Source: Trichoplax adhaerens
Taxonomy: Eukaryota; Animalia; Placozoa
Assembly (NCBI RefSeq): GCF_000150275.1
Contig: NW_002060965.1
Coordinates: forward strand, 248,001-312,000
DNA length: 64,000 nucleotides
Direction: 5' to 3'
The stretch's first letter is position 1, and each line of letters begins with the position of its first letter. The translations under genes were made by a program, and so were the position numbers. The notes beneath the pieces were generated by a model that was not told the DNA's origin, made no database searches, and saw only the letters and a list, made by a program, of their open reading frames with translations. Shown one piece after another: positions 1 to 42,230 of this stretch.

Positions 1-570
1 TCTGTATTGAAAGCCAATAAAAATAATCACGATAATCATTTAATATCTAGTTGGACCGATTTTGGCCGTGATAATTTAGATGCATTGGAAAATTACACTA
101 TAATTTTAGCTTCATTATATACCAAAATAGGCAGTATAAAATACAGCCAGTATAAATATGAATCTGCAGTATCGGTTTGCCAGAGGGCGATTTTTATTAA
201 ATCGAATCTCTTAGGCATTCGTGGTGATTCAGATATTGCCACCATGTATGATGTCATTGGTCATTCCTATAAATATCAAGGTAAATACACCAATGCCCTG
301 GATAATTATCATAAGTCATTAAAGATCCAATCAAAAATATCAGGAAACGGAAATTATAGTCTAAGTATCGCCAACTGTTATGAAAATATTGGCGAAATAT
401 TTCATCGACAGAAAAATTTCGGTCAAGCTTTATCCTTGCATAAGAAATCGTTGAATATTCGATCAAAGATATTAGGATACGATACTATTGAAGTCTTACA
501 CTCCAGCAGTAGACTTGCTAAAACTATGTGGGAATATAACAACGCTTGTGAATCTGCTATACAGGACTAA
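1..570 (+). CDS. 3' part of an intronless TPR-repeat protein (5' end outside the window), short paralog of the 10279-11955 gene
   Basis: The frame is open from base 1; the ORF-track start is only a TTG. It has 42-aa TPR repeats (IATMYDVIGHSYKYQGKYTNALDNYHKSLKI; IANCYENIGEIFHRQKNFGQALSLHKKSLNI) collinear with residues ~140-280 of the 558-aa protein, and it stops early after about 3.5 repeats. Confidence 0.8.
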   Translation, partial: SVLKANKNNHDNHLISSWTDFGRDNLDALENYTIILASLYTKIGSIKYSQYKYESAVSVCQRAIFIKSNLLGIRGDSDIATMYDVIGHSYKYQGKYTNALDNYHKSLKIQSKISGNGNYSLSIANCYENIGEIFHRQKNFGQALSLHKKSLNIRSKILGYDTIEVLHSSSRLAKTMWEYNNACESAIQD

Positions 571-1164
571 TATGAAATTCAAGAATGCAAAATATAGATA
601 TTGGCGAAATAAGTTCAAAAAAGATGTTATCTTATTTGTAATTATAATTTGACTATTATTGTATTCTCAGAGATGTAAAGGGGTCATATCAGACATGATT
701 GGTGCATACAGTCTGAAACTTGATTTTTCTAAATTGTATAAAATTCTTTGAGTTTTTCTAATATTGCTAAGCGTTAATACGATCTAATTTAATCAGTAAT
801 GTGATTTACATATTTTTTCTGATGCATTTTTAAGATTTTTATAATAGCTGTATAAATTTTTGCATAATTATAAATATTACTAATTGGATAGAGAGCGAGA
901 AATCAGTTGCTACATAAACCGTGGGTGACAAGAAAAAGAGAAGAAACATTGATAGAAATTTTACTAATCGTATTCATTAATGACAAGGAAAAAAAATAAA
1001 ATAAAATATTCTCAAAATTAGATGCTGATAATTACTCTCATACAATATTTATAGTTCTATTAAGGAAAGATGCTTAAGCGAATGCGATTTAAAAATGAAA
1101 CGACAAAAAATCAAGATATTATCCAACAATGACAGCTTTCTGCTTTTCAAGTTTTATCTATGTT

Positions 1165-1650
1165 TGCGCAGAAATAGAAAATATTCCTCAAATCAAGTCT
1201 TATCAGGAAAATATGACAGAAGCATGACATTAAAGTATCTGGATAACTGTAATATGTATATAGCCGATAGCTACTTCTCTACTTTTTGAAATAGAAAGTA
1301 ATAGTTAGCAAATAAGCCATTTCGTTTCTAATTAATTCTGGCTGGGTTTATCTAGGCAGTTACAGCATACCATTAGGATTATTTAACGATTGCCATATTA
1401 ATAAAGTAGATAATTCGTTATTTTAATGAAATAGCAGTAAATAGTCAGGAAATGAACTGTTAGTTTTCTAACATAGATCATGGCTGGCATCTATCCACGG
1501 AGAGCCGCAGCATAAAATTAAGAAGCCTAAATGGCTATAATCGTGATATACTTGATACATAGTTCTTTCTTCTATAAAATAGTATTAGGGAACTAAAGAA
1601 TTAATTATTAATTTCCTACTAGATTTTATCTATGATAGATCGCAGCAGCT
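1165..1650. repeat. Degenerate tandem repeat, ~140-150 bp period, about 3 copies
   Basis: Related blocks (GAAATAG..AGTA..TAGT..G.AAAT....TTTCTAA....TGGCTGG..T.TATC....CAGCATA) recur near 1285, 1425 and, more weakly, 1573. Confidence 0.5.
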
Positions 1651-3971: not shown

Positions 3972-5040
3972 TGTTACGGAGCTTGATACTCCGTGATAAG
4001 TGGCTGGTAGTAAAGTTGCTAATGAGAATGACTGTAAAGATTATAATTAATCTAGCAAATAGTGTCGTGCTATTAAAAATATCATTCAAGATTGTTAAGT
4101 CGTAGACCACAATTCTCAATTGTTAATTGATTATTATTATTTATAACTTTTAATATATTGACTGTTATTAATTAATTATGCCGAAGTCGGCAATATAACT
4201 CAAAATGCGATATTACACCGCTGTGGTGAGATAATTAATATTAACCAGCGATACGTAGTAATTAATACTCTGTCTAGTCTACAGTAAGTCTGTAACGCGT
4301 ATTATATAATTTAAAGTGATAGATTAGCACAAGGGTATTTGTGTGATATAGGAGATTGTATATAAGCCTGATCATTAATTTTTAATCTCGGTTCCTCTGA
4401 GGCTACGCAAGAGCACACTAGTACTAAGTTGTAGTACTTATTAACAAAATATTTAATAAGCTAAACTTATCGTTGGACTCGTTTTCTATAGTATGGGAAT
4501 AAGTTAGTTTTCCTTTATTGAGGATCTTCGGAGTTAGTCAGGGAACCTTAAGAAAAGATAGTTTAGTTCAGGAGCACGAAGCATTGTCACAAAAGCTGTG
4601 TTGTGACTCAGTTTGATCTTTACGAATTTACGGAAGCGTGCGGAATTTCTGCTGAGCCAACGACAACAAATAAATTTCCTTTCTTTTCTATCGGTGGTTG
4701 AAATCGACCTTTATTAACTACAACCAACCAACTTACTAACTCATACTCTAACCGACTTGCCAAGATAGTAAAAGCGCCTCATTTATATACTCTAACATTG
4801 GCATGAATATGCATAACTTCTCTAACATTGCGATAACATTCTTGAGATATCATTTTTCAGTATAACACAATTGACTAATAAACATACTTGTACCGTACAA
4901 CATTAATTTATCATTTACCATACAAGATAAAGGTAGCAACTATGCATAGTTAAGGATATTAATCCTTAAGAACAATATTATCTAGCGATGCTAGTCTAGC
5001 AGTCGCGACAAGCTGCTCGAAAAAAAGCTGTTTTGTGACA
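3972..5040 (+). mobile_element. Solo LTR family E (~652 bp net) with LTR D nested inside
   Basis: Termini TGTTACGG...TTGTGACA. Flanks GTAGT (3967-3971) / GTACT (5041-5045) form a 5-bp TSD with one mismatch. TATATAA at 4359. The 3' terminal inverted repeat TGTCACAAAA/TTTTGTGACA is interrupted by element D. Confidence 0.7.
4599..5010 (-). mobile_element. Solo LTR family D (412 bp) nested in LTR E
   Basis: Termini TGTTGTGAC...GTCGCGACA. Perfect TSD AGCTG at 4594-4598 and 5011-5015. Minus-strand TATA (4782-4789) followed by AATAAA (4710-4715). Confidence 0.8.
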
Positions 5041-5397
5041 GTACTGTAGAATTGTATGCCTTAATTCCCATACATGACTATCACAACGGCGATTACAGTA
5101 CAATTTATTCGCTTTAGAACTACTGTAAGTATTATTGAGCGTCTCTGATTCTACTTGCTAGAGCAAGACCTTAAACAAAATATAATAACCAATATAGGGT
5201 AGATATGTGTTAATTAGTGTTAAGCTTTAACAAGTCTTAATCCAATTAACAAGCGTTACAGTGTTATATGCTATAATATCGAGATTATTCTAGAAATATC
5301 TATGTCAGGATAATTCTTACAATTTAAATCACTGTGATATTATAACTTACTTATGGTAGATTATAGATTATTCAGATAATGTTCTGTGATAGAACAT

Positions 5398-10278: not shown

Positions 10279-11955
10279 ATGGGTTACAACATAAGCAGAA
10301 TTGTTAAATCATCACTAGCGAATGAAAAAGAAGATTGCGTTCAATTTTTACTTCGATCCGGATCTCGCTATTGTGAAAATAAAGAGTTTGATGCCGCTCG
10401 ATTAGAATATGAGCAAGCTTATCGTGAAATTAGCACAATGTGCTGTACGCATGATTATCGACGATTATTACGTTGCGAAGTCCAGTTAGCACTGTCAGAT
10501 AGCTATCTTAAACAGAAGCAAACTGACGATGCTTACAGATATTGCCAACTTGCTGAAATGGACAGAAACTCTGTTAAAGAAACAAGACAAAGTGGTAAAG
10601 AATTTAGCGACTATCCGATAACCAAGACAATTGAACGCTACTACAAATTAATCACGGAAAATCGAGAAACATTGACTTGGAAACAGAGAATATTAAAGTA
10701 TTATTACTTAGCCATTGCTGCTACCTACTGTAAAATTGGAAGCCAATGTGATGAACGATATAAGTACGATATGGCTCTATCCATTTATAAGCATGCTATA
10801 CAAATTACCACTAAGGTCTTTGGGGTCTATCATTCCGCAATTGCTAAATTATATGATAATATTGGTAACATCTATTGCTGCCAAGATCAGTACAGCGATG
10901 CACTTTCAAATTATCAAGCATCATTAAATATTCGTCTGAAATTATATGGAAATAACCATTTAGACATCACACAGTCTTATGAAAATATCGGAGAAGTTTA
11001 TTGCAAACAGAATCGCTACGATGATGCTTTATCAATGCATAAAATATCGCATATGATTCGACTGGAGACATTAGGAAAAGATGCAATCGATTTAGGCCAT
11101 TCTAGCTATAATATTGGAAAAATTTATTGCTTACAGGAGAAATATGAAAATGCGTTAGAAATGTATCAGCAAAGTCTAGAAATTTATCGTATCAAATTAG
11201 GGGATTCTAACGTTGATGTATGCAATACCTATATTGGTATTGGAAATGTCTACTTTCATCTAGGCAACTTTGACGAAGCAATGGCCTATTATCAAAAGTC
11301 ATTAACCATTGAATTAAAAATGTACGGTGAAGACAATCTGCATATCGCTAACACTTATAGTTGTATTGGAGGAGTCTATAACAAGCAGAACAAGTATGAC
11401 GAAGCATACGCAATTTATCAGAAATCCTTGGCTATTCGTTTGTCCAAGCTTGGCGACGATAGTTTATCTGTAGCGCATAGTTATCACTGGATCGGAATTA
11501 TTAAATATTTACAACAACAGTATGATGATGCTATGAAATTTTACGAAAAATCGCTACTTATAACATTAGAGAAATTAGGAAGTGATCACTTGGAGGTGGC
11601 TGAATTATATGATAGAATAGGCCAACTTTACCATTCACGAAGTCAGTATGATCACGCTTTTGCCTATTTTGAAAAATCTCTTTTCATAGTTATGAAAATT
11701 TTGGGAGAAGATACTTTCAAGTGTGTTTCTTTATATCGTAAAATGGGTTATTGCTATAACGAACAACATCAATTTGATGCAGCAGTTGTAATATTTGAAA
11801 AAGCAATTCGAATTCTATCCAATCTGGAAGGTAATTATTATCAAGATATTGCCGATTTATATAAAATGATTGAAAATATTTATTGGAAACAGGGAAAAGA
11901 TGAATTCGCAATATTAGCTCATCAGAAATGTCAAGAAATAATAGCCTCAGAGTAG
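10279..11955 (+). CDS. Intronless TPR-repeat protein, 558 aa, with predicted N-myristoylation (MGYNIS)
   Basis: Uninterrupted ORF with about 10 repeats of 42 aa (consensus A.sY..IG.vY..Q.kYddAl.mYqKSL.I.l..lG...l.v). The N-terminal TPR-like segment is shared with neighbouring paralogs. G2/S6 motif. Confidence 0.92.
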   Translation: MGYNISRIVKSSLANEKEDCVQFLLRSGSRYCENKEFDAARLEYEQAYREISTMCCTHDYRRLLRCEVQLALSDSYLKQKQTDDAYRYCQLAEMDRNSVKETRQSGKEFSDYPITKTIERYYKLITENRETLTWKQRILKYYYLAIAATYCKIGSQCDERYKYDMALSIYKHAIQITTKVFGVYHSAIAKLYDNIGNIYCCQDQYSDALSNYQASLNIRLKLYGNNHLDITQSYENIGEVYCKQNRYDDALSMHKISHMIRLETLGKDAIDLGHSSYNIGKIYCLQEKYENALEMYQQSLEIYRIKLGDSNVDVCNTYIGIGNVYFHLGNFDEAMAYYQKSLTIELKMYGEDNLHIANTYSCIGGVYNKQNKYDEAYAIYQKSLAIRLSKLGDDSLSVAHSYHWIGIIKYLQQQYDDAMKFYEKSLLITLEKLGSDHLEVAELYDRIGQLYHSRSQYDHAFAYFEKSLFIVMKILGEDTFKCVSLYRKMGYCYNEQHQFDAAVVIFEKAIRILSNLEGNYYQDIADLYKMIENIYWKQGKDEFAILAHQKCQEIIASE

Positions 11956-13913
11956 GAATTACAACTTCCTGATAAGATCATAATCTGCAGACGGATTTAA
12001 TGAATAACTACAGTTATTAGATGGATTGTTGAAAACAACAGCCTATTAAATATGCCATTTTACGTCACTCTATGTATTAATTTATTCTTCACATTTATTG
12101 ATAGTGTAGGATATTGCTTTTGTTATAACAGCTGCATAATAAAATTAAGTCTTGTTATGAGATTTTAAATCATTTTTTTAAGAATACCGAATATTATGAT
12201 AAAATCGAGTCTTGCTATGAGATTTTACATTTTCCTTCTGAAAAAAGCAATGTCGGATATGTGACAGATTACTATTTAATAAATCTTAATATGGTAGTCA
12301 AGTAATAATTCCATGACAATTTATGTAAAAATATTCGCAATACTCTTCACCATTCTGCTTTCTATAGCATAATTATAAATTTAAGTTTGTTTTAACATTA
12401 CTCTGTGCAGAATTTTATATCTCCATCTTCAATTCGAATGATATTACATTTACAATTGGACCAATAAGATATCTATTCTATTAAACTACGTTGCGCTAAT
12501 CTGCAATGGCTACATATTATTATTTTTAACTCTAATAAATTAATTATTAATATTGGATGCTGAAATTTAGGCTATTCTGTGAATGAAGTTATCCGCTTAG
12601 GTATTGTTGTAATTCTTCATACATGTTAAACATTGCAATTATAGGTCAAAAGTTTTCAAATTCAAAAGTCATGTTAATTATAAGTGAGAATAATTAATTA
12701 TATACAGCTCAAATATTTATTTATACTTAATATCGAGATCGTTATTGTAGAATTAGGATATTGAAGAAAACATAATATACGGGATACAGTCGTTGATCGC
12801 TAATAAATTATAGTCCTTTAAATTTGTGATTATAGTTCAAAATTTATTATGATATCATTGACATCGGTTACCGAGTCATTCTATTTTTTTTCGCTAGTTC
12901 TTGCTCTAAAGAAAGTTATGGATAATTTTATTTCGGTACAATTCATTTCATTAGCCTATATAATACCGTACGTTTTGATGCTTTTTACATTTCTGCACAA
13001 TATATATATATTGAACGTAGATCTATACTCTCAGATACACACGTGTACAGCAACAATTAAGCTACTATAAACACTTCATTTATACATCGGAACATTATCA
13101 TTGGAAACCTTTTGTTCATGTTTTTCAAAATGATAATGGCCAGAACTGGACAAGCGAATCTAAATAGATGTTATTTGATATTCACAAGGTGATTTAAGCT
13201 TTAATGTCAGTTTAATAGCTATAGTACGGTACTTTACTTCTCAGGTGCAATCATATGTGATTTTACACCTTTGAAAGCTTTTCAAGTAAATACGCTGCAC
13301 GATATACATAGGATATATTACACGAATAAAACAAGACATAATCTTATTTTCTCGATAATTTATGTTCATTTAGAAGCTTTAAAGCTTTGCTTCAATACAT
13401 TTATCCTGTTTATATCCGGTATATTGTACAACTTTCTTATACAACTATGAAACAATACTAATAAAATTATAGCAACCTTTAATTAAAAATCTTGAATTAG
13501 AAAAGTGGCTTAGACCTTTGATATACTGCTTTCCTTTTCAATGTTCTTAGTGATCGCGGCTGGTAAATAATTTTAAAGTAACGATGTAACTTCAGTCACA
13601 TTGCTACTCAATTTGACTTTTGCTGACTTCAAGTAGTATCAGAATTGTGGAAGAAAAAGAGTATCTATTGATAGGCAATAAATTTTGCATAAATCATACC
13701 AACACTACATAACATTCTGGTATGGTGCTATGCACTCTTGAGCATTAAAAAGCCATAACATTTTTACCTAATAACTAATAAAAAGTGCATAAACTGATAT
13801 GAGTAATACGTAATTAGCGAAGAAGTACTAGCATGTTACAAACATCAACTGAGGAATACGATTACTGCTCTATCCTTCCACTTATAAATTTCAGCAAGAA
13901 CGCGATATTCACG

Positions 13914-16900
13914 TTACATTTTAATGTAAATAAGTTCCATTTTTTGATGAAGAATTTTAACCTTTGAATAGCTACAATCCGGATAGCTTACTAGGATATT
14001 GAGTGCTTTATGGTACGCAAATAATGCCCCAGTATAGTTTTGTTGATTGAAATAAACGTCACCAATGCCATTATAGGAGTTAGCAACAATAAAATGATTA
14101 CTTCCTAATATTTTCAATCGAATATCCAGCGATTTTTGAAGGTAGAATAAAGCATCAGCATGTTTTCTTGTCTCTTGTAAGCATTCCCAATTGCTTGATA
14201 AGCTACTGCAACTCTGATATCCCTTTTATTCAACAGACTTTGTCTGATATCCAACGATTTTGGATAGAAACTCATGGCATGATTCAATTCATCTTGTTTG
14301 AAATAGATATGACCAATTGCAAGATAGCAATTAGCAATGTCCAGATTTTCTTCATCTAATAAATTCAGTCTAATTCTCAACGATTTTTTATACATAGCTA
14401 AAGCATCGTGATAGTTTTCTTGCTTAAGATAATCATTAACAAATGCGCAATATGCATAAGAAACCTGTAATTTATCTTCTCCAAGCAATAATATTTGAAT
14501 CTTTAAAGGTTTCTGATGCATAACTATCGAATCAGCATACCTCTCTTGCCTCAAGTAGACATAAGCTATGCGAGAGTATATCCAAGAAACAACAAGATTA
14601 TTATTTCCTAACAACTCTAACCGACATGTAAGACAGTTTTGGTACGTTGGAATTGCTTGTTCGTGCATATACATTAGAGTGTAGATATCTCCAACGTAAT
14701 AATAAGAATTTACAAAATCTGCATGACTACTACTTAAGACTTGTAAACGAATTTCTAATGATAGATTAAAATTAGCCAGTGCTTCGAAGTATTGATACTG
14801 TTTTTCGTAAGTTTTGGCTAAGCAATGACATAAATCACTTATAAGTAAGTCGTTTTCACCTATAATATTCATAACAATACAGAGCGATTCTTGATACATG
14901 GCTAAAGCATCACTATAGCGTGCTTGCATATAATAAACATCACCAATCGCGTAGTATATAGGGCAGGTATAAACGTTATTCGTAGCATAAATTTTTAATC
15001 GAGTAGTCAGTAATTTTTGATAAATACTTAGAGCTTCAGCATGCTGAAGTTGCGAAAAAAGGGCATCGCCCATGGAATGATGTGAATCAACCACAGGCAA
15101 GCTCGTATTTCCAAATAATTCGAGAGTTATTTTTAAAGATTTTGGGAAATAATTTAAGGCATCATCGCATTTACCCTGAGAGTAATAGACATTACCTATG
15201 CCTGAATATGCATTTGCAACGTAACTATTACTACTACCTAGGATTGATGTTATCATATTTAAGGACTTATTAAACATGATAAAAGCATCGTAATATTTAT
15301 CGCGTTTTAAATAAATGTTGCCCATGGCAAAATAAATCTCCGATACAGCTATATTAATATGGCCCAAAACTTCAATCCAAATTGTTAGACTTTCTCGCAA
15401 AATGGACATTGCTTTTTGGTAATATTTTAGATGACAATAAACTTGACCCATTCCTGTTTAAGAATAAGCTATTTCAATATTTACTTGCCTAGAATTTTTT
15501 GCTTTATATCTAGCGATTTTTGATGCCATTGAAGAGCATTGTCGTAGTTCCTTGCTCGCAAAAGATCTTACCCATATAGCAACATACAAACTATTATTAC
15601 CTAACAACTTAGAGCTAATTTTAAGGCATTTTTGATACATTTGCATTGCTTCATCATTTCTTCTTTGCTCGCCATAGATGTCTCCAATGCCAAAATAGGC
15701 CAATACTGCTCGTAAACTACCATCATCCATGCCTGCTATTTTTCGACAGATATCCGAAGATATCTCGAATATGGTTAAAGCATCCATGTACTTATTTTGC
15801 TTCAAGTAAATTTCACCCATTCCAATATAGCAATCAATAACAACCAAATTATCATTAGCGGAAATATTAATAATAACAATATCCAAAGATTTTTTTATAC
15901 ATATACAGTGCATCATTGTATTTCTCTTGCCTACAGTAGATTAAGCCAATTAGTAAGAGTAAATTAGCCGCCTTCAAATTCTTGCTTCCTAATATTTCCG
16001 ATCTAATTTTTAGGCACTTTTTAAATATCACTAAGGCATCTTTATATTTACACTGTAAAGTATAGACCTTGCCTATAGCAAGATAGGAAGACGCCATGAG
16101 TAAATAAGTATATCCTAATATTTCTAGTTTTCGATGTAATGATAACGTCTCTTCGTATTCTTCCTCATAGCGATAGGCATCGCCAATGCCTAAATAAGAG
16201 CATGGATCATAAAATTCTTTAAATCCTAATATATCGAGTCTCAAGTTCAAATATTTTTGGTATATTATAGGATCTTCATCGTATTTATCTTTTGAAAAAT
16301 AAACATCATCAATGCTATGATGTTCATTTGCTGCAGCTAGGTTATTTTGTCTTAAAATATCCAGTCTAATATAGAGATTTCTGGTACATGATTAATGCAT
16401 GTTGAAATTGATTTTGTGCAAAGCAAAGATGTCCTAAGGCACTATAGGTATAGGCCATGTCTAAGTGACTATCACCGAGTGCTTTAATTTTAGAGGTAGT
16501 GATTTACCGCAATAATTTAATGCTTCCGTAAACATAAGTTGGCCCCTTTTGATCTTGCCTAGACAAAGCATTTAGCGATTCTAACTTAATCATTAAGAGC
16601 TACGGCTATCATTTGTGCTTGGGAAATATATTCCTTAGCCTGCTCAAGTTGACATAATGCACAATATGTTCTAAACATATCCGCAAAAATATCAATACGA
16701 AGCTACTTATAACCTTCGATGTCATCTTTCATGGTCTTCAATTTTCTAGAGCCATTCCATATTGAAATTTTGTAATTTTAATTTCTTCTAAAGTGAAATG
16801 GCGATGGCCAGTTTTCCGAATAGTTTTTAGTTCCTGGATTATAAGATTTTCTATTGAATCTTGAAACGAAGTTTTAATATCTTTAACATGTTGAATCTCT

Positions 16901-19973: not shown

Positions 19974-19976
19974 ATC

Positions 19977-28800: not shown

Positions 28801-29896
28801 CAATTTAGCAGTTCCACGGAGGGAAATTTACTTGAACTCATAAATGCTAAATAGTATTTTAATGTATGATTCAACTAATTTTCCTGTTGACCCGACATGG
28901 GTTATTGAGAAAAATAAAAAACATTTCATTTTTTATCGAATAATAGAGAAATTTAAATATATAATTATAGTGTTCATAGTTGTGCGTAAACGCGTAAGAA
29001 CTAGAACATTTACTAGATAAAGGCATTAGATGACTAGCTAGGAAAGAAGGCCTTACTCCTAAATTAGTCAGTTGTGAATTTTATACCCTCGAGAGGAAAG
29101 AGATGGCTACTTGCAGTAAAAAATTGATCTCACAGAAGTATAAAGCTTATACAGATTTCCTTTGTCTCCTCAATGAAGGAGATAAAAATAGCTGCAGCAG
29201 GATTAAACCTATGCCAATTCATACGGTAGCATTTTTACAAGCACTGACTCATATTTCTGAACATACAGTACTATTTAAATGTTACTACCATTAGCAAGTA
29301 AGATTTTGATATAAGACCTTAAAACTCAATGGAGCATCCACTTAACATAGTATAGACAAGATAAGCACTATATTAGAACTTTTGTGGCTACACAATTTCA
29401 ATTAATTTTCAAGGTATTTGCTACTTTTTCTCAGTAGCCGGTGATTGTTATTATTCTAATTAGATGAAACATCAAAACACTTATTTGATGAACACATAGC
29501 TTTTACTCTTGCAAGCGTTGTATTTACAAATTGATCTTCCATCACTAAGTGTCTAAAATAGTTATGCTGCACCCTACAGGATAACGCCGTGATAGCTTCA
29601 AGGAGATCTGAGACCAAACACAGCTCGTAAATATTATCCATAGAATTCTGCGATAACCATAAACATCCTAAAACAGTACCTATGCAAATATTGTACTGCT
29701 TTATTTAGATGTACGTTAACATACTATAGTCACTAGACGGCAAAGACAAATTCTAATCCTATACAGTCATCTGCTGACAACTTTAACTGCTTGCAATTAT
29801 AAGATGAATTTTACAAGTCTGTGGCTCATTCAATTTCAAGGTTTGGATTAGATATTTTTATTATCGTTTTTGACCTCCTCGCATTTAACCTTAAAA

Positions 29897-31394
29897 TCAT
29901 AATCCACTCTTAGCTTGCATTTCTTTTATCAAGTCCGGTACTATAGTAGCTTCTTCCATATTTTCTACTGTCATGTAGTAATTTGCTATTGTCTTATATC
30001 AATTAATTATCTTGGTAGAATCCTCATTGGCATAATGGCTGTATATCTCTAAAGAGGATTGCAACTCCGACAGAACATCACTATATTTCTATTGGAAACA
30101 GTAGCCAGTCGTTAAGTAATCGTAGGCATCAGCATGCACTAAAGTACATCCTTTTGAGCACTCACAAGAACAATTTGGCATTAAATGCTGCTATCGCATC
30201 AAGTTTTTTCATGCCAAAATAATTACAGCCAAAAGCATCATAATAATCTAATAATCCCGCACTAACCATTAACTGTATCTTCTTAAAATATTTATCTAAT
30301 GTCTAGTTCATTTTCTAGTAACTCTGCAGTACTATCGTAATTATTGTTAGCCACAGCGACCAAGCCCAGGGACAGATATAGCGTAGCAAAATCCCTGTCT
30401 TATTCTTCTGAATTTACTTGACCAATTTCTAGCTATTTTGGAATACTGCTTTGGCCTGTTCTGACTCTTCCATTGACATATAAGTCTTTCCAATGTCATG
30501 ATAAGCATCTACAACTGATAAATCAGGGTCTTTGAGTGGTGGCGGTTGCAATGATTTCAGTTAAATGTAGTAGTACAGTAGGGTGACTAATAGGAAGAAA
30601 CAGTGCACTTGTACTGTTTCGAGTAAAGACTGGGATTCTCCAGTTAATGCCGTATCTGATAGCCAAATATAAAATTTGGGTTTACGTAGGCGAACCAATA
30701 GTAATAGCAGGAGACCATCACTGGGTACGAAATCAAAGGAAGCTTTTACTTCATTTAACTTTTCTACTTCTAAATATTGTCTATCCAAACGAAAATGTAT
30801 CTCAGCAACCTTATCATATTTTTTCCAAAATGCTTTATGAAGATATTAAGCACTTCTCATAAGTAAAAATAGCTAATTCATTTTCATCCAAGCCTTCATG
30901 GCTTACACCTAGTTCAAAATAAGTGTCACACTGCTTGAACTATCCACAGCATAAATGTAGCCCTAATTTCTTGGGCTTTCTTGTACACCTTTATAGCTTC
31001 TTCGTAATCATGCAAATAATATAAATTGCCAATCTTACATTAGAGTTTTCCTAATGACTATAAATAGTTACAAACTGAAATTATACATTAGCGACTTGTA
31101 AACAATTTTCGTCCTGTTTTGCTAATCAAATCTTAAGAATCTATTCTAGAAGTGATTTGGCTGCATGTAGTCGCCTTCATTCATTCAAATGCTTGCTAGA
31201 TTCATATAAGAATGAGCAATAGGTATATTATTTTCTGCAACGACACTTATTTTTACGTTCAGACTTTTCTCATATTTTTCCTAGGCGTCGCTATCTTTTC
31301 CTTGTAGCATCTAATATCTCCGATTGAATCATATAGCGACGCAATAGATTAATTTTGATCTCCTAATACTTTTAATCGCATATTTAGAGCAGTA
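29897..31394 (-). pseudogene. 5'-truncated, decayed duplicate of the 32766-34937 TPR gene
   Basis: Nucleotide collinearity with the intact gene (31323-31394 vs 34261-34332; 30841-30943 vs 33561-33664). Translations such as QVNSEE*DRDFATLYLSLGLVAVANNNYDSTAELLE vs QANSEEENVDYAQLYLWMGFVAVAKNHNDRATELLV, and the end EMQAKSGL* vs LLEAKSGISFEE*. Many stops and indels. Confidence 0.88.
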
Positions 31395-31400
31395 CGTAAT

Positions 31401-32710: not shown

Positions 32711-32765
32711 AACTCTCCTTTAAGGATTAGAATAAAATTTTGTAATGGTAATTATGATCTTTCTG

Positions 32766-34937
32766 TTATTCTTCAAAAGATATTCCACTTTTAGCTTCCA
32801 ACAGTTTTAAAAAGCTCCGCACTTTATTAGCTTCTTCAACATTGTTCAATTCTAAGTGGCATTTTGCCATGGTCCTGTAGGTATTAATTACCTTCAGTGG
32901 ATCATCATTTATATAACGCCAGTTTATTTTGAAGGCTAATTGCAGCTCGGATAGAGCATCGCTGTACCTATGCTGTTGATAGTATGCAGTTGCAAGATGA
33001 TTGTAAATATCAGCAGCTTTTAGTGTATCAACGTTTTCATTAGAAATAAGAACATCTTTTGCTTTATTAAACGCTGTAATTGCAGCATCCCATTTCTCTA
33101 ACGCGGCATAATTGCAGCCGATAGTATCGTAAAAAAGAAATAATTCTTCTCCACAGGGATCGCTTTCCAAAACATTCAACATAATGTCTAATCCTTTCAC
33201 TAGCAGCTCTGTAGCCCTATCGTTATGATTTTTAGCTACAGCAACAAAGCCCATCCACAGATAGAGTTGAGCATAATCTACGTTTTCTTCTTCTGAATTT
33301 GCTTGACGAATATCTAACTCTTTTTGAAAGAATTTATCAGCCCTTTTTGTATCCTTTAATGCCAAATGAGCCATTCCGATTCCATGATAAACTTCTGCTA
33401 GTTGTAAATTATCGTCTCCCAATAACATGAGTCGAGTAGTTAGAGCACTTTCAAACGAAATCAAGGCTTCATTTTGCTTTTTTATTTCTAAATAAACCTT
33501 CCCCAATCGGTAATAGGTCTCTGCAACCTTTTCATGATCTTTTCCGAAATGCATTATTAAGATTTTAAGACACTTCTCATAATTAGAAATAGCTAATCCA
33601 TTTTTATCCAAGCTTTCATAGCTAGCACCTATTTCAAAGTAAGTCTCACCCACACTCGGGCTATTTTCGCCATATAATTCAGCCCGAATTTCTAGAGCAT
33701 TTCTATACATCTTTATAGCTTCTTCATAATCATCTAGTGAAAAATAATAATCGCCAATAGTATGATAGCAAACAGCTACATATGTATGTTTATCTCCTAA
33801 AACTTCTTTTCTGAGATTTATGGCTTTATATAATAGCTCTTTTGCAGTATCGACTCTATCCTGATCGATCAAATTCGTTCCCATATCTAGATATATATCA
33901 GCTAGATTCACACTCTTTTCTCCGGCAATATTTTTTCTAATTTCTAAGGCTTTCTTGTACAAAGTTTCTGCTTCATCAAAATCATCCTCATGACGACAAA
34001 TTATTGCAAATTGAAAATATATATCCCCGACTTGTAAACTATTTTCGCCCCATTTAGCTAATCGAATCTTAAGAGCCTTTTCTAGAAGTGATTTTGCTTC
34101 ATCATAGTTGCCTTCATTCACTCGAACGCAAGATAGACGCATATAAGAATCGGTAATATGTATATCATTATCTCCAACGATACTTATTCTCATGCTCAGA
34201 CTTTTCTCATATATTTCCAAGGCCTCGCTGAATTTTCCTTGCTTACACTTAATGTCTCCAATTGAATCATATAGTGATGCAATAGATAAATCTTGATCTC
34301 CTAATATTTTTAACCGTATATTTAGAGCAGTATCTAGGTTTGATAAGGCTTCATCGATTCGTTGATATTCAGCATATAGTAAACCAATACGCGAATAAGA
34401 ATCAGCAACTTGTATATGGTTCTCCCCTAATTCTGTTAACCTAATTTTTAGCGCTTTCTCGTTGTACTCTATAGACTCTTTAACGAAACTGTAGCAACTA
34501 TACACATCACCAATGCCTTCATAAGTATCTGCAATTTCAGTTGTATTATCTCCAGTCGCTTGTAGTTTTAAATTAATTGCGGTTTTATAACTGTCTATAG
34601 CTTCTTGAAATTGATACTTCATGTTTTCCGTAAATCCTCGATTATCGAAACATTTAGCTATCCTTATGTCATCTTTTAAAGTCTTTGCAATTTCTTCTGC
34701 TCGATTACATAAATCAAAAGCTTGTTCGTAACGATATTGCCATGTATAGCAAACAGCAGAATCAAGAAGTAAATCGCAAAGGAGCTTATTTCGATCGTCT
34801 AACTGGTCAGTGATTGTTTGAAGTTTAGTTAATGCATCATGAAAACAAGCTAAAGCCTGATCATCCAGCTCTTTATATACTAGTAATAGTCCTTTTTGTC
34901 GTTGTCCTTGAATATCTTGAATTTTAGAGCTATCCAT
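32766..34937 (-). CDS. Intronless TPR-repeat protein, 723 aa (MDSSKIQ...), acidic
   Basis: Uninterrupted ORF with about 14-15 repeats of 42 aa. The ORF-track start at 34970 is a TTG; the first ATG is at 34937 and aligns with the paralog start MDVIPK. Confidence 0.93.
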   Translation of the reverse strand: MDSSKIQDIQGQRQKGLLLVYKELDDQALACFHDALTKLQTITDQLDDRNKLLCDLLLDSAVCYTWQYRYEQAFDLCNRAEEIAKTLKDDIRIAKCFDNRGFTENMKYQFQEAIDSYKTAINLKLQATGDNTTEIADTYEGIGDVYSCYSFVKESIEYNEKALKIRLTELGENHIQVADSYSRIGLLYAEYQRIDEALSNLDTALNIRLKILGDQDLSIASLYDSIGDIKCKQGKFSEALEIYEKSLSMRISIVGDNDIHITDSYMRLSCVRVNEGNYDEAKSLLEKALKIRLAKWGENSLQVGDIYFQFAIICRHEDDFDEAETLYKKALEIRKNIAGEKSVNLADIYLDMGTNLIDQDRVDTAKELLYKAINLRKEVLGDKHTYVAVCYHTIGDYYFSLDDYEEAIKMYRNALEIRAELYGENSPSVGETYFEIGASYESLDKNGLAISNYEKCLKILIMHFGKDHEKVAETYYRLGKVYLEIKKQNEALISFESALTTRLMLLGDDNLQLAEVYHGIGMAHLALKDTKRADKFFQKELDIRQANSEEENVDYAQLYLWMGFVAVAKNHNDRATELLVKGLDIMLNVLESDPCGEELFLFYDTIGCNYAALEKWDAAITAFNKAKDVLISNENVDTLKAADIYNHLATAYYQQHRYSDALSELQLAFKINWRYINDDPLKVINTYRTMAKCHLELNNVEEANKVRSFLKLLEAKSGISFEE

Positions 34938-36741: not shown

Positions 36742-38967
36742 CTATTGTACTTCTTCTTGGTCTTTCTCTTCCTCTTCTTCTTCCTCATCTTCTTCTTTTG
36801 CTTCTTCTTTTGCCAAAACTTCTAGATCAGATTCATTTATTTTCAACAGACTTATCATTTCAAGTGCTTCCTGATCTCTATCAAGTTTAGAATAGCATTC
36901 TCTCATACAATCGCAAACATATAAAATTTCTGGATGTCGTTTTCCATATTTCTCGAAGTAAATCTCTAAGCAGGGCTCATACATCAATAAAGCTTCTTCA
37001 TACTGTTCCTGCTTGAAATAAACGTTGCCCAATCCTTCGTAAATGGGGCAAATCTCTAATGATTCTTCACCAAATTTGTTTACAATAAGATTCTTGGCTT
37101 CGTAATACATCGACATAGCATCATCATGTTTGTCTTGATTATAATAAACATAGGCGATAGTATTATATAATCTTATGAGATCATCGATCGCATCGTCTTC
37201 TCCTAAATACTGAAGCTTAATATTAAGATATTTTGAAAGCATATTAATGGCTTGATCATAATTACCGAGTTCATTATGAATTAAACCTAAAATATGATAA
37301 TTATTACCAATGTCTAAATTTTGATCATTAGTTTCTTTTAAACGAAAGCTTAGGGCTTCTTGACACATAGATAATGCATCATTATAGCCCTCTTTCCTGT
37401 AATAAGCCATTCCAAGATTGAGATATAAATCGATTAAACTAAATGCATGTTTAGTATCAACTTCTTGCTGTATAACCAATGATTTTTTCAACATCGATAT
37501 GGAATCATCTAGCTGATCCAGGTCAAGATAAATTTTTCCCAGAATGTGATATACCTTTGCTACTTGCAGATCTTCCCCTTTTAATTCAAGTTGTATACAT
37601 AGATACCTCTCATACATTAATATTGCATCGATGAATCGGCTTTGCTTGCTATGAATATCTCCAATATCGCAATATATTTGAGCCGTAAGTAAATTGGTTG
37701 CTCCCAAAAATTTTAATCGTAAAGTCAGAACCATATTATACATTTCTAAAGCCTTATCAAACTTGCTGAGGCTAGTATATAACCTACCTAGAGCTTGATA
37801 AGATTCGGCCACATTTAAGCTTTCATGACCAAGCAATTCCAACTTTATTTCTATTGCTTTCGTAAGCATTGAATTAGCCTTCTCATATTCTTCTTCTGTG
37901 TAATAAATCGTGCCTAAGTTATGATAAACTTTAGCAATTTCTATACTATTACGCTCAAGCAAGTCTAGCCAAATATTTAAAGATTTCTCGTGCAAGAACT
38001 TGGCTTCCTCGAAATTATTTTGATATGTATAGACTTTGGCCAATTCATGAAATGCATCAGCTACGTATAAGTTATGGTTACCAAATAATTCTAGCCGTAT
38101 ATCGCGAGCTTTCTCAATAATATTCTGAGATTCACGATCTTTCCCTTGAGATAGGTAGATTCCTCCAATTCTTACGTAGGATTCCGTAACTTCAAACTGA
38201 TGTTGACCGACAATTTCTAATTTTATATTTAAGGATTTTTCGAACAGCGACATAGCATCTTCAAGTTTATTTTGTTGCTGTTTTATATCTCCAATGGAAT
38301 CGTAAACATTAGCTACTGCTAAACTCTTGCTGCCTTGCTGGCTCAATCTAATTTTTAGAGCTTTTTCGTACATTAATAAGGCATTATCGATTTTATCTTT
38401 AGTGATATACATATCGCCGATGCTGCAGTAGGAATCAGCGGTTTTTAAGTGACCATCTCCAAATTTATCTAATCGAATTTTAAGTGACTTTTCGTAATTT
38501 TCTTGAGCTTCATTATACTTATCTTGCCAATAATAAATATCCGCAAGGCCATGATAGGTATCAGCGATATAGATATTATTATCCCCTATAGCCAAAAGTT
38601 TCAACTTTATGGATTTCAAATAATCATCAGCAGCATCTTTAAACAATCCCTTCATACCTTTGACTTTTCCGCGACTATCAAGACAATTAGCTAGTCTTAA
38701 GTCATCTTTCAGCATTCTTGCTAACTCCTCTGATTGACTACAGTAATCTAAAGCTTCGCTATAGCAATGTTGTTGTCGATAAGTAGCAGAAATATCCAAA
38801 CTCACGTCACATTGAAGTTCATCAAGAATTCTTGTATTCTTAATAGTACTATGAATTCGATCTAGTACTTGCTGATATTTCGATCGGGCTGTTTTAAAAT
38901 AACCTTTTTTAAAGTCATCATGGCCCTTTTGGTACAGCTTTCGCAGTTCTTTAGGGATGACATCCAT
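36742..38967 (-). CDS. Intronless TPR-repeat protein, 741 aa, with a poly-acidic C-terminal tail
   Basis: Uninterrupted ORF collinear with the 723-aa neighbour (IADTYHGLADIY vs IADTYEGIGDVY; VANVYDSIGDIK vs IASLYDSIGDIK). Ends EEAKEEDEEEEEEKDQEEVQ. Confidence 0.94.
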   Translation of the reverse strand: MDVIPKELRKLYQKGHDDFKKGYFKTARSKYQQVLDRIHSTIKNTRILDELQCDVSLDISATYRQQHCYSEALDYCSQSEELARMLKDDLRLANCLDSRGKVKGMKGLFKDAADDYLKSIKLKLLAIGDNNIYIADTYHGLADIYYWQDKYNEAQENYEKSLKIRLDKFGDGHLKTADSYCSIGDMYITKDKIDNALLMYEKALKIRLSQQGSKSLAVANVYDSIGDIKQQQNKLEDAMSLFEKSLNIKLEIVGQHQFEVTESYVRIGGIYLSQGKDRESQNIIEKARDIRLELFGNHNLYVADAFHELAKVYTYQNNFEEAKFLHEKSLNIWLDLLERNSIEIAKVYHNLGTIYYTEEEYEKANSMLTKAIEIKLELLGHESLNVAESYQALGRLYTSLSKFDKALEMYNMVLTLRLKFLGATNLLTAQIYCDIGDIHSKQSRFIDAILMYERYLCIQLELKGEDLQVAKVYHILGKIYLDLDQLDDSISMLKKSLVIQQEVDTKHAFSLIDLYLNLGMAYYRKEGYNDALSMCQEALSFRLKETNDQNLDIGNNYHILGLIHNELGNYDQAINMLSKYLNIKLQYLGEDDAIDDLIRLYNTIAYVYYNQDKHDDAMSMYYEAKNLIVNKFGEESLEICPIYEGLGNVYFKQEQYEEALLMYEPCLEIYFEKYGKRHPEILYVCDCMRECYSKLDRDQEALEMISLLKINESDLEVLAKEEAKEEDEEEEEEEKDQEEVQ

Positions 38968-41050
38968 TATATCGACAATCTCAATAGTTTAACCATTCTA
39001 TGATTTTACTGCTTTTTTAATCAATACAAACCTTTTCAAGGGTTATTTAAACCAGTGGCAAAGTTTCACTGAATATCTCACAAAATACATCAAGATGATC
39101 CTTGTTATTTGATGTAATTTAAAGTAATTAACGAATAGCCTTCTAGTAGTAAAGTTGAAATTATCCAGCAAAATATTGATTGAACGACCAGACGAAAAGA
39201 AATAATAGGAAATATCAAGTTTCCGGAGTAAGTTTTGATTAGTGGCGCCGTTTCTGGATAACGAACAATCGAACATTAGCCAATTGCTAATTTATGTCCA
39301 AATGTCACGTGCTAATCCACCAATATATAATTTTTAGCTAAGGGATGTATTTGTACTTTTTACACTACTATTATATTTCCATAACAAGCGCAAGTAAACG
39401 TTAATATGCTAAATATTAATTTATTATGCATACTTGATTCGATGTTACATGGTAGACTCGTGACGACATAAATGAAACTGGATTGACTTATAGTAGCTCA
39501 TAGATATTTGTATATTCTAAATATTACTTAATAATGCGCACTTGATTTGATGCTACAATATGAACTAATGATGGTGCAGTGTTTACTTCTAAATGAAAAT
39601 GGATTGACCTATACTAGTTTGTAAATACCTACTAAGTGACAAGTGATTGCATTTCATAGGATCTAAATTTTTGGTTCTATTAATAAGGGTTTTTCGTTGA
39701 TCTAGACTACATTTGACACTAATCAGTTCCTGCAAATGCAATCTAATGACAGAATTAGCAATATTATTACATTGTTTTAGTGTATACCTTGAAAGTATTC
39801 TTAGTACTAAGTAAAGCAGTAGTGAGAAGCAATGCCGTAATAGGTGTGGTTAGCATTAGGCATTAATATAAATCTTAATAGTACTACATCATATTATAGT
39901 ATATAATCTCAATTATGAGAGCAGAAAATGCTAATCTGCAGCGTTGGAATTGAACTTAGTGTTATTAAGCAGCGCCCTAAATCTTTTCAATGTAACCATG
40001 CAATCTATTCTGGAGCTCTTCTCACTATATCCAATATCCAAATAATCATTACCAGGTCAGAGATTCCAGAGATTCTTCATTGCCACTCGAAAGTAAATGA
40101 ATAGGCATCGATCCATACTAAACGATAATATATTTTCTTAAAACTACTTTTACTCTATAACGAATATTTCTGTAGTGATTTCAGCCAATTGAAGTAGTGT
40201 CATATTGAACGGTAGCACTAAGGCGTTATACAACCTGTTGGCTACAGATCGATTTTCATTTATTGCTAAGATTTTCTAGTTAGTACAACTCTATGCAGCA
40301 TGGCTTTATTACAGTATCATCTTATTAATTAGATACTACTTATATATATATATTATAGTAAATACTTAATTAGATATATTGTGACACAAAATCACATTGC
40401 TGCACGTAAAAGCCTTTAGGCTTAACGTCTCTAATCTAGATTCATTATGTGAATACATTTAAATTTCATCGAAGGTAAGATATTTACTATACTATAAGTA
40501 GTTAACCATTGATGAAATGATTTTAGTTACTATCTAAAACGTAATACCGTTATAAGGCTCATATTTCTTCGTGAAACTGCTATTCTTGACATATTATTAT
40601 CATTCTACAATTCAATTTCAAAGTATCAGCATATAAATAGGTCAAGTAAAGCTGATTTCTGTTGAATTTCAATCTCTCTTTACGTATAACTGAATTTCGA
40701 CTATACTATTGTAATACATTAAATTCAGATACCGGTTAGCCAACATTTAAGTACAAAAATAAAGTTGACAATACATCTGGCTTTACCGCTTAGATTACTT
40801 AGCAATTAAAAATCATATACAGTAAAAGAAACTATGATGTTATCCCACTTGATGTCAAGAATACGCCAAAATAATTAAAAAATACACTATTTCAAGTAGA
40901 GCTGAATAAGAGTGATATCTTAATTAAGATAATTAACCACACTGAAACTCAACTGAAGACCGAACTGGATGGTGTACAATTTATTCGCAGGGTGGCTACA
41001 GAGGAACCAACCTGTAATATTATTTTCTAGATTTGCCACCCTTTACCTAT

Positions 41051-42230
41051 TTAACTACCTGTCATACTGGATCTATCTGACCTATCTTTAATATCTTTCA
41101 ATATTTCTTTCATTTCTGCTACTTCTCTAAATGTACGTAATTTATGGCAGCAATCCTTCATACAAGAACAGATGTATTCCAACTCCGGATGTTTTTCACC
41201 ATATTTGGTCGATAAATATTAGAGCAGAATATATATCCATATGCAAGACATTCTCATATTCTTTCAGATGGAAATAGTTATTGCCTAGACCTTCGTAGAT
41301 AGGACACATTTGCAATGCATCATGCCTTAAATGCTTGCAACATAATCTTTAGTAAGATTATACATGGATATGGAATCATCATATTTAGCTTGATTAAAAT
41401 AAATATCAGCTAAAGCTTTATAAGAATCTGCTATATCATCGCCTATAATGTCTCCACCTAAAGTTTTTAATTTAATATCAACATGTTTTAAGTGCATATT
41501 TAGCGATTCATCATATCCCCTTTGCACATCGGCATATATTGACCCTTAAGCAATATAACTTTCTGCAATCTCTAAATTTTCCAAGCCAGATTATCCGAAT
41601 CGAATACTAAGGGCTGTCTGACACATGGGCAGAGCATGTTCGTGATTAGCTTGTTTATAATAGGCTATGACAAGCATATATTAGAACAGCACTAACAGGC
41701 TCATTTAGCGATAGATAAATATTCCCAATTTAGTAATTGGTTATATGGCTTTGCTACCTCTATACTATATCCTAAAAACTCTAAGCGAATATGAAGACTT
41801 TCTTACATACATCAACAGTACGTCTGCTTATTGATCTTACTTATTTTAAGCATCATTAATATCATGATAAGATTGAGAAATATGCAAATCGGAATCCTCT
41901 AGTAACTCTAATCAAATATCAAGTGCCTTCTTAAACACTGGAAAGGCATGATTGCAATGATCTCGACAATAAGATAAATCTCTAATGGCCTGATATAAAT
42001 CTACAATTGCCAAGTCCTGAGCACCAAGTATTTTCAATTACATATTTAAAGCATGAAGAAACATCTATTCAGCATCATCTTAATCCTCTTTAAAGCAGTA
42101 TATGTTTGATAGTAGCAATTAGCCACTGTTAAATTCCTTAAAGTCAAGATACCAAACCAAATGGATAAGGCTTTCTCGTATATTAGCAGAGCAAGATCCA
42201 CATTTATTCTATAGCGTTAAATTTGGACTA
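41051..42230 (-). pseudogene. Decayed TPR pseudogene, paralog of the 741-aa gene (3' part only)
   Basis: The minus strand translates LQMCPIYEGLGNNYFHLKEYE...KYGEKHPELEYICSCMKDCCHKL vs LEICPIYEGLGNVYFKQEQYE...KYGKRHPEILYVCDCMRECYSKL. ORF 41327-41527 is one fragment. TPR remnants with stops continue to ~42230; the 5' boundary is approximate. Confidence 0.82.

What the first reader, a model, noticed from the sequence alone, without database searches (positions are those of the whole stretch)
1..42230. Birth-and-death array of intronless, TPR-only proteins: candidate receptor/immune-like recognition family
Seen: eight paralogs in 42 kb (4 intact, 1 partial, 3 pseudogenes) share an ~100-aa N-terminal TPR-like cap and carry from about 3.5 to about 30 repeats of 42 aa. 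Scaffold positions are conserved while the residues around the helix-A tyrosine vary strongly (HSYHR, STYHR, SSYDG, NSYRG, ELYHA, SSCCC, YSYHC, DLYQE, KLYQK). No NB-ARC/NACHT or enzymatic domain is attached. Known: variable TPR arrays act as sensors in fungal and coral NLR-like proteins, and tandem clustering with pseudogenisation is typical of recognition families. Inference: this is a stand-alone variable-solenoid sensor repertoire rather than kinesin light chains or NPHP3 orthologs.
Basis: partly seen in the sequence, partly recalled or inferred. Interest (0 to 1): 0.8.

Follow-up and report, generated by a model that had tools for sequence, protein, structure and literature searches.

The report
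Placozoan TPR-only gene cluster
This stretch of the Trichoplax adhaerens genome holds an old tandem cluster of single-exon genes made only of 42-residue TPR repeats; they are stripped-down relatives of Trichoplax TPR-GTPase-death-domain proteins, are kept by purifying selection where I could test it, and are only speculatively immune sensors.

Summary
The window has eight loci of 42-residue TPR_12/TPR_10 repeats: five intact genes of 301, 558, 1428, 723 and 741 aa, and three decayed copies. Two more intact genes lie further left.

No NB-ARC, NACHT, Roc, COR or Death exon lies in or beside the cluster, so these genes really are TPR-only.

They are not an isolated class. Their about 130-aa N-terminal cap occurs at least 122 times in this genome (Trichoplax adhaerens). 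Annotated Trichoplax sp. H2 relatives carry cap-TPR-Roc-COR-Death, TPR-Roc-COR, TPR-Death or TPR alone. Trichoplax ROCO genes with TPR and death domains are already published.

Young family members elsewhere have near-identical repeats. Their groove-facing positions show pN/pS of 1.4 to 2.7, as in fungal NLR repeats.

The window's copies are the opposite. They are 43% identical or less, synonymous sites are saturated, and repeats are not homogenised. Two cluster genes compared between T. adhaerens and H2 show 13 synonymous and 2 non-synonymous changes, with unchanged length.

An immune-sensor role is possible but untested. This scan has already met the family on other DNA.

The parts
1..570 (+). 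3' two thirds of gene1. The intact single-exon gene encodes 301 aa (cap plus about 3.5 TPR units), and its CDS runs from 335 bp left of the window to 570. The N-terminus is MGHNIS.
   Evidence: The ORF was rebuilt from contiguous genome sequence. Pfam finds TPR_12/TPR_10 only. An identical-length orthologue, 299/301 identical, is annotated as a single exon in Trichoplax sp. H2. The AF2 model has pLDDT 86 and is all-helical TPR.
10279..11955 (+). g2, an intact single-exon gene of 558 aa with a diverged cap and about 10 TPR units. The N-terminus is MGYNIS.
   Evidence: The same 558-aa sequence is held letter for letter in the ESM Atlas. It forms a clade with gene1 and the 292-aa gene to the left, with 100/100 support.
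13842..16900 (-). psi3, a pseudogene with a cap remnant and about 22 TPR units, broken by several stops and frameshifts. The damage is densest in the N-terminal third.
   Evidence: Three-frame reading; tblastn coverage.
21572..25858 (-). g4, an intact single-exon gene of 1428 aa with a cap and about 30 TPR units of 42 aa. The N-terminus is MGAGLS.
29894..31399 (-). psi5, a decayed tandem copy of g6. It corresponds to g6 residues about 212-732, is spread over three frames, and keeps no cap.
   Evidence: 66-81% nucleotide identity to g6.
32766..34937 (-). g6, an intact single-exon gene of 723 aa from its first ATG (the TTG start in the ORF list is a bacterial-code artefact). It has a cap and about 14 diverged TPR units.
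   Evidence: It is sister to g7, with 97/87 support.
36742..38967 (-). g7, an intact single-exon gene of 741 aa with a cap, about 15 TPR units and an acidic C-terminal tail.
41081..42213 (-). psi8, an old and heavily decayed TPR fragment. It is about 29% identical to g7 residues 332-709, has many in-frame stops, and keeps no cap.

Best explanation
The window holds part of a ten-locus tandem cluster from a placozoan gene family with at least 110 members. Each member begins with a family-specific cap of about 130 aa, made of degenerate TPR hairpins, followed by 4 to 36 KLC-type 42-residue TPR units.

In other members this cap-TPR exon is the N-terminal, ligand-binding part of Roc-COR-Death (ROCO) or TPR-Death proteins. 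The genes of this cluster lack both the GTPase switch and the death domain and are complete as TPR-only proteins.

Shown here:
- They are old paralogues.
- Where they can be compared with Trichoplax sp. H2, they are kept by purifying selection.
- They fold as an open TPR superhelix.
- Three copies have decayed.

Inferred:
- They work as cytosolic protein-binding scaffolds that hold partners in the concave groove formed by helix-A residues.
- Those starting MGxxxS (five of the seven intact genes in the cluster) are probably tethered to membranes by N-myristoylation.
- Having no output domain, they most likely act as adaptors or as competitors or modulators of their ROCO-Death and TPR-Death relatives, much as CARD-only and PYD-only proteins modulate inflammasomes, rather than signalling themselves.
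For: Identity and anatomy: Pfam finds TPR only. The 42-aa register holds. Repeats fill the proteins wall to wall, 5 to 36 units in the 44 sampled members. The first Met lies within a few codons of an upstream stop in nearly all 40 fetched members.

Family size: the cap matches 122 places, almost all at the start of long open frames.

Link to ROCO and Death: cap-bearing H2 proteins are cap-TPR-Roc-COR-Death (P0136, P0140), TPR-Roc-COR (P0126, P0130, P0151), TPR-Death (P0148) or TPR-only (P0123, P0139). In this genome, 10 of the 40 sampled genes have a COR and/or Death exon within 5.5 kb downstream on the same strand. I counted this by eye; the expected number is about 0.2.

Absence in this cluster: there is no NB-ARC, NACHT, Death or COR hit in C1392:218-312 kb. 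tblastn with the Roc-COR-Death parts of six H2 relatives finds nothing in 114 kb. No intergenic ORF of 65 aa or more carries a domain.

Tree: (g6, g7) is sister to a ROCO-linked gene, and the ROCO and Death labels are scattered over the tree.

Constraint: H1 against H2 gives 9 synonymous and 0 non-synonymous changes for the 292-aa gene, and 4 and 2 for gene1. Lengths are equal and the region is collinear at 98.6% nucleotide identity.

Fold: AF2 gives pLDDT 86 and pTM 0.81. The nearest solved structures are the KLC1/KLC2 and LGN TPR domains.

Groove: the most variable repeat positions are HMM positions 6, 9, 13, 16 and 17. These equal canonical TPR positions 2, 5, 9, 12 and 13 (the mapping to the concave face rests on my own knowledge and on Dyrka et al. 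2014, PMC4986451).

Gly2: 14 of 46 members start with MG.
Against: No expression, splicing, localisation or binding data were reachable.

The H2 comparison covers only the two short genes at the left edge, across just 1.4% divergence. The H2 orthologues of g2, g4, g6 and g7 were hidden from the protein and contig tools.

Only two of the five MG starts in the cluster (MGQKPS, MGAGLS) satisfy the strict PROSITE myristoylation pattern. The other three have His or Tyr at position 3 (pattern recalled from my own knowledge).

The modulator role is pure inference.

Downstream exons of a kind that neither Pfam nor the six relatives represent would have been missed.
Confidence: 0.6

Rival explanations
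1. One reading: the cluster is a stand-alone repertoire of variable-solenoid sensors. It would recognise foreign or altered-self molecules and evolve by birth and death under diversifying selection.
For: Tandem cluster with three pseudogenes. Repeat number ranges from 3.5 to 30. Variability is concentrated at groove positions. In young members elsewhere, groove positions have pN/pS of 1.40 between paralogue pairs (bootstrap interval 1.12-1.70) and 2.1-2.7 among the repeats of L035, against 0.2-0.4 at other positions. Relatives are fused to death domains. Fungal NLR TPRs show the same regime (PMC4986451).
Against: The signals come from other loci. The window's genes have 27-38% internal repeat identity and no detectable 126-bp tandem arrays. 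Their paralogues have saturated synonymous sites. Two of the cluster's genes are length-conserved between H1 and H2, with 13 synonymous and 2 non-synonymous changes. They have no output domain. No challenge or expression data exist.
Confidence: 0.2
2. The ORFs are first exons of longer genes whose downstream exons, carrying an unknown or very distant domain, were not detected. On this view 'TPR-only' is an annotation illusion.
For: Many relatives are exactly that, a TPR exon spliced to Roc-COR and/or Death exons. A Death-like hit lies 12 kb right of the window, at C1392:324194.
Against: No Roc, COR or Death similarity appears anywhere in the 114 kb around the cluster. No domain is found in the intergenic ORFs. 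H2 annotates the two left genes as single exons of 292 and 301 aa. The nearest Death-like hit is on the + strand, beyond other genes and to the right of the whole cluster, so it is not downstream of the minus-strand genes g4, g6 and g7.
Confidence: 0.07
3. The cluster is functionless debris of a once-useful expansion and is drifting towards loss.
For: Three of the eight loci are dead. Dispersed repeats fill the spacers.
Against: Five ORFs of 301 to 1428 aa remain open even though synonymous sites are saturated between paralogues. The H1-H2 comparison gives 13 synonymous and 2 non-synonymous changes, where neutrality predicts about four non-synonymous changes per synonymous one. Scaffold residues are conserved.
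Confidence: 0.08
4. They are kinesin light chain or nephrocystin-3 orthologues, as automatic annotation names their H2 relatives.
For: The TPR_12 and TPR_NPHP3 models score above their cut-offs. The nearest solved folds are KLC TPR domains. Source names are 'Nephrocystin-3' and 'Kinesin light chain'.
Against: There is no heptad coiled coil and no P-loop NTPase. Repeat numbers are 3.5 to 30 rather than 6. The family has at least 110 paralogues. The Pfam scores are sums of repeated partial matches.
Confidence: 0.01

Closest known systems
Trichoplax ROCO proteins with TPR and death domains (at least 17 ROCO genes; Civiero et al. 2014, PMC4104024; noted again in PMC11378527)
   Same: The N-terminal cap plus 42-residue TPR array is homologous. 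The cap profile finds annotated H1 and H2 proteins with cap-TPR-Roc-COR-Death, and g6 and g7 group with a ROCO-linked gene.
   Different: The window's genes have no Roc, COR or Death part. The papers I could search do not describe the TPR-only majority, which numbers over 100.
TPR sensor arrays of fungal NB-ARC/NACHT NLRs (Dyrka et al. 2014, PMC4986451)
   Same: The repeat is the same KLC-type TPR. Variable and selected sites lie on the concave face, and repeat number varies. Young members of this family (L035, L038, L021) share the high internal repeat identity and pN/pS above 1.
   Different: There is no NOD ATPase. The window's arrays are old and not homogenised, at 27-38% identity.
TPR domains of kinesin light chain 1 and 2, and of LGN/Pins
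   Same: These are the best structural matches (6swu, 3nf1, 6f9i, 3ro2). They are peptide-binding grooves built from helix-A residues.
   Different: Sequence identity is 16-21%. KLC has six repeats after a coiled coil. These genes have a TPR-like cap and up to 30 repeats.
Rapsyn and NPHP3 (N-myristoylated TPR proteins; from my own knowledge)
   Same: A Gly2 start followed by a TPR array suggests a membrane-tethered scaffold.
   Different: There is no RING or coiled-coil part (rapsyn) and no NTPase (NPHP3). Myristoylation is not shown here.
IFIT proteins and CARD-only/PYD-only regulators (analogies only; from my own knowledge)
   Same: These are stand-alone modules of immune pathways, encoded in tandem clusters and lacking any signalling domain of their own.
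   Different: No homology was tested or is expected. IFIT TPRs are of another type and bind RNA.

Membership tests
TPR superfamily, KLC-type 42-residue repeat (Pfam TPR_12 / TPR_10) | Repeated helix-turn-helix units that match TPR_12/TPR_10 and form an open superhelix | tested here: met
   TPR_12 E-values run from 3e-72 to 2e-218. The 42-aa register holds. The AF2 model is made of paired helices with pLDDT 86. Foldseek matches KLC, LGN and CTPR structures.
Placozoan cap-TPR family (defined here) | An N-terminal cap of about 130 aa with the signature L.CD.YLDI...Y..Q ... RIA.C.D..G.IK, followed directly by 42-aa TPR units in one ORF | tested here: met
   It is met by gene1, g2 (diverged), g4, g6, g7 and the psi3 remnant. 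psi5 and psi8 keep no cap.
ROCO proteins | A Roc GTPase followed by a COR domain in the same protein | tested here: not met
   All 53 COR candidates in the genome were scored and none lies in C1392:218-332 kb. tblastn with the Roc-COR parts of six relatives finds nothing.
Death-domain adaptors and receptors | A Death domain encoded in the gene | tested here: not met
   All 127 Death candidates were scored and none is inside the window. The nearest is a weak hit at C1392:324194, 12 kb to the right.
STAND / NLR (NB-ARC or NACHT with a repeat sensor) | A central NOD ATPase | tested here: not met
   There is no PF00931 or PF05729 hit in the window. NB-ARC-TPR_12 genes do exist elsewhere in the genome, for example L052.
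Kinesin light chain | An N-terminal heptad-repeat coiled coil followed by six TPRs | tested here: not met
   The cap is TPR-like and not a coiled coil. There are 3.5 to 30 repeats.
Nephrocystin-3 | A coiled coil and a P-loop NTPase upstream of the TPRs, as a single-copy orthologue | tested here: not met
   Domain content is TPR only. The family has at least 110 paralogues.
Hypervariable, homogenised repeat arrays (fungal NLR type) | High internal repeat identity, roughly 85% or more | tested here: not met
   Window genes show 27-38% identity and TRF finds no 126-bp array. The feature is met or nearly met elsewhere in the family: L035 85%, L038 76%.
Hypervariable, homogenised repeat arrays (fungal NLR type) | dN/dS above 1 at concave-face positions | tested here: inconclusive
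   This cannot be tested on the window's paralogues because pS is 0.68-0.78, which is saturated. It is met in L035, L038, L020 and L021. H1 against H2 for two cluster genes shows purifying selection.
N-myristoylated proteins | Gly2 with Ser, Thr or another small residue at position 6, and lipid attachment | tested here: inconclusive
   Five of the seven intact cluster genes start MGxxxS. Only two fit the strict PROSITE pattern. Lipid attachment cannot be tested with these tools.

The most novel reading that the evidence does not exclude
The TPR-only proteins are the detached, partly membrane-anchored sensor or decoy subunits of a split receptor system. In this reading, groove-variable TPR arrays capture ligands and act in trans on the Roc-COR-Death and TPR-Death paralogues. 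That would be a death-fold innate-surveillance network in one of the simplest animals, built on ROCO rather than NLR switches.
Probability: 0.1. Interest if true: 0.75.

Novelty: new variant of a known kind. Interest (0 to 1): 0.45.

Why it matters
Placozoans lack LRR-type NLRs and canonical cytosolic sensors (Kamm et al. 2019, PMC6321704). A family of more than 100 TPR arrays that shares its sensor module with GTPase-death-domain proteins is therefore a candidate for how such a simple animal diversifies intracellular recognition.

This window shows the other face of that family: old, conserved genes with no output domain. That sets a useful limit. Not every tandem TPR cluster in this genome is a fast-evolving receptor locus, and any functional model has to explain why domain-less copies are kept under constraint.

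It also corrects the database names 'Nephrocystin-3' and 'Kinesin light chain' given to these genes.

Tried and rejected
- Three word-indexed protein searches (g7 whole, g7 cap, g4 cap) returned only generic TPR proteins or nothing. An exact-product contig look-up (g7) and an exact-sequence cluster look-up (g2, g4, g6, g7, the 1080-aa gene) also failed. The window's own proteins and their H2 orthologues appear to be hidden.
- Because of that, I could not check repeat number or pseudogene sharing in H2 for g2 to psi8. The H2 locus I did obtain ends at window position 9523.
- Site-wise dN/dS among the window's paralogues was abandoned because pS is 0.68-0.78.
- The cap-profile search of 1.84 billion representatives is swamped by generic TPR arrays, with 131,200 hits. 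Only hits with the whole cap at residue 1 were informative.
- The ESM Atlas gave only generic TPR neighbours.
- Co-location of cap genes with NB-ARC exons, judged by eye, gave about 3 cases within 25 kb against about 1.3 expected. I judged this not meaningful.
- A horizontal-transfer origin was considered because the genes are intronless and top hits include Neochlamydia and other bacteria. Identities are only 24-34% and the GC content matches the host, so I did not pursue it.
- Literature searches for this family under TPR_12, nephrocystin-3, KLC or 'TPR-only' in Trichoplax found nothing.
Full report
**What the window is.** It is G000:C1392:248001-312000 of a 105.6-Mb assembly in 1414 contigs with about 30% GC. 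Family members found by profile search are TRIADDRAFT proteins of Trichoplax adhaerens, on contigs whose lengths equal C1398 and C1414. The genome is therefore T. adhaerens H1.

**Checking the observation.** ORF lists and tblastn with the four long ORFs mark eight TPR loci between positions 1 and 42213, and none in the rest of the window.
- Pfam finds only TPR families in the intact products. TPR_12 and TPR_10 are the strongest, with TPR_12 E-values down to 2e-218.
- The 'partial' locus at the left edge is an intact 301-aa gene that starts 335 bp before the window.
- psi3 keeps a cap remnant and about 22 repeats but switches frame several times and carries stops.
- psi5 is a three-frame wreck, 66-81% identical in DNA to its neighbour g6.
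- psi8 is older and full of stops.
- The cluster continues to the left with a 292-aa gene and a 1080-aa gene. It therefore has ten loci in about 65 kb, seven of them intact.

**The cap and the family.** The first 130 or so residues are 35-40% identical among g4, g6 and g7, and weaker in g2. Pfam sees only weak TPR matches there.
- An AF2 model of gene1 (pLDDT 86, pTM 0.81) shows two TPR-like hairpins, a disordered loop at residues 110-133, then four regular hairpins. Its nearest solved folds are the KLC1/KLC2 and LGN TPR domains and designed consensus TPRs.
- The g7 cap matches 122 places in the genome, nearly all at the start of stop-free frames of 350 to 1675 aa, and many of them in tandem clusters.
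- I fetched 40 of these. In nearly every one the first Met lies within a few codons of an upstream stop, and repeats fill the protein from end to end, 5 to 36 units.
- Fourteen of the 46 members start with MG, including five of the seven intact genes of this cluster. Only MGQKPS and MGAGLS fit the strict PROSITE pattern, which I recalled from my own knowledge.

**Attached domains.** There is no NB-ARC or NACHT hit in the window.

Earlier notes of this scan pointed to death-domain and Roc-COR fusions elsewhere in the genome, and I tested that lead.
- Eight cap-bearing proteins from the representative search were scanned against Pfam. Two are cap-TPR-Roc-COR-Death, three are TPR-Roc-COR, one is TPR-Death and two are TPR only.
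- In H1, all Death candidates (118 hits) and all COR candidates (52 hits) were scored.
- Reading those coordinates against the 40 sampled genes, ten have a COR and/or Death exon within 5.5 kb downstream on the same strand: L003, L007, L010, L017, L025 and L039 with COR, and L015, L024, L031 and L036 with Death only. By my own arithmetic about 0.2 are expected by chance.
- At least a dozen further cap hits show the same arrangement.
- H2 gene P0136 spans 4.6 kb for 1247 aa, so these parts are spliced together.

None of these exons lies in C1392:218-312 kb, the stretch that holds the cluster and the window.
- The nearest Death-like hit is a weak one at C1392:324194 (+), 12 kb right of the window.
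- tblastn with the non-TPR parts of six H2 relatives finds nothing in the 114 kb around the window. The best hit, E = 0.037, lies inside the g4 TPR coding sequence.
- Intergenic ORFs of 65 aa or more carry no Pfam domain.
- H2 annotates the two leftmost genes as single exons of 292 and 301 aa.

The window's genes are therefore truly TPR-only, inside a family whose fuller members are ROCO/death-domain proteins. Trichoplax ROCO genes with TPR and death domains were noted by Civiero et al. 2014 (PMC4104024). I found no paper on the TPR-only majority.

**Age and selection.**
- Window genes are 43% identical or less to one another and 38% or less to any other sampled member.
- In a maximum-likelihood tree, g2 groups with gene1 and the 292-aa gene (100/100 support).
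- g6 groups with g7 (97/87 support). That pair is sister to the ROCO-linked L007 (93/80 support).
- The ROCO and Death labels need five and three changes on the tree, so output domains were lost or gained repeatedly.
- Synonymous sites between in-cluster paralogues are saturated, with pS 0.68-0.78.
- Within-gene repeat identity is 27-38% in the window genes, against 85% in L035, 76% in L038 and 69% in L021. TRF sees no 126-bp arrays in the window.

Per-position entropy over 710 repeats peaks at HMM positions 6, 9, 13, 16 and 17. These are canonical TPR positions 2, 5, 9, 12 and 13 of helix A, the concave face.
- Two close paralogue pairs elsewhere (L035/L038 and L020/L021) give pN/pS of 1.40 at those five positions, with a bootstrap interval of 1.12-1.70, and 0.35 at the other positions. 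Per-repeat pS shows no misregistered repeats.
- Among the repeats of L035, positions 6, 9, 13, 16 and 35 reach 2.1-2.7, against 0.22 elsewhere.
- This is the regime described for fungal NLR TPRs (PMC4986451).
- It belongs to young members of the family, not to this window.

The one cross-species test I could run bears on this cluster.
- The H2 locus L057 is collinear with window -10335 to 9523 at 98.6% identity. The exception is a rearranged repeat nest at about 5.4-6.4 kb.
- The 292-aa gene has 9 synonymous and 0 non-synonymous changes. Gene1 has 4 and 2. Lengths are unchanged.
- That is strong purifying selection, though over a short distance and for the two shortest genes only.

**Reading.** The anatomy and the evolutionary placement are well supported. 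The function is inferred.
- An open TPR superhelix binds partners in a groove lined by variable helix-A residues.
- Several members probably sit on membranes through a myristoyl anchor.
- Lacking any output domain, they most plausibly act as adaptors or as modulators of their ROCO-Death and TPR-Death relatives.
It gains some support at family level, but the window's copies behave like conserved housekeeping scaffolds rather than fast recognition genes.

**Limits.**
- The protein and contig tools hid the window's own proteins and their H2 orthologues.
- The adjacency counts were made by eye from tool tables.
- The selection tests use Nei-Gojobori counts on two pairs and on within-gene repeats, where gene conversion may play a part.
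- This scan had already reported hypervariable-groove TPR arrays and TPR-death or ROCO genes on other DNA of this genome.

Noticed in passing
L035 and L038 (contigs C1306 and C1293), L021 (C1413:902630-907500), L040 (C1410:8205580-8211090): These family members have near-identical internal repeats, with mean identity of 85%, 76%, 69% and 64%. Their pN/pS reaches up to 2.7 at helix-A groove positions and at position 35. L035 and L038 differ by exactly one 42-aa unit.
   Followed up: yes
G000:C1360 and G000:C1339: TPR_12 matches lie in stop-free frames of 8698 and 7814 aa on small contigs. If real, these would be giant TPR genes of about 200 repeats. They could also be collapsed or haplotype contigs.
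   Followed up: no
G000:C1389:264000-286000: A unit appears twice on the minus strand: a cap-TPR ORF, then a Death exon, then a Roc-COR ORF, then another Death exon. It looks like a duplicated two-gene block (TPR-Death next to Roc-COR-Death).
   Followed up: no
window 3930-7008, with copies at 19538-19973 and 48127-48692 and left of the window: A dispersed repeat or LTR nest. It is the only place where the H1 and H2 sequences are not collinear in the 20 kb compared, at about 5.4-6.4 kb.
   Followed up: partly
window 52749-53780 (+): An intronless rhodopsin-type GPCR ORF (7tm_1, E = 8e-10). The listed TTG start is an artefact, and the first ATG is 17 codons further in.
   Followed up: partly
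L043:1704-2669 (-) and L043:5292-6263 (-), 1.7-6.3 kb right of the window: Two tandem single-ORF PAQR/HlyIII-type receptor genes of 321 and 323 aa.
   Followed up: partly
window 49903-50537: A 237-bp tandem repeat of 2.7 copies with 76% matches, in a gene-poor spacer.
   Followed up: no
window 36742-36813 (the 3' end of g7): g7 ends in an acidic Glu-rich tail encoded by a CTT/GAA triplet run. No other cluster gene has this tail.
   Followed up: no
L052:3014-5767 (+) (C1407): A single-ORF protein of 917 aa with NB-ARC followed by about 9 TPR_12 units. The same repeat type therefore also serves as the C-terminal array of STAND proteins in this genome.
   Followed up: partly
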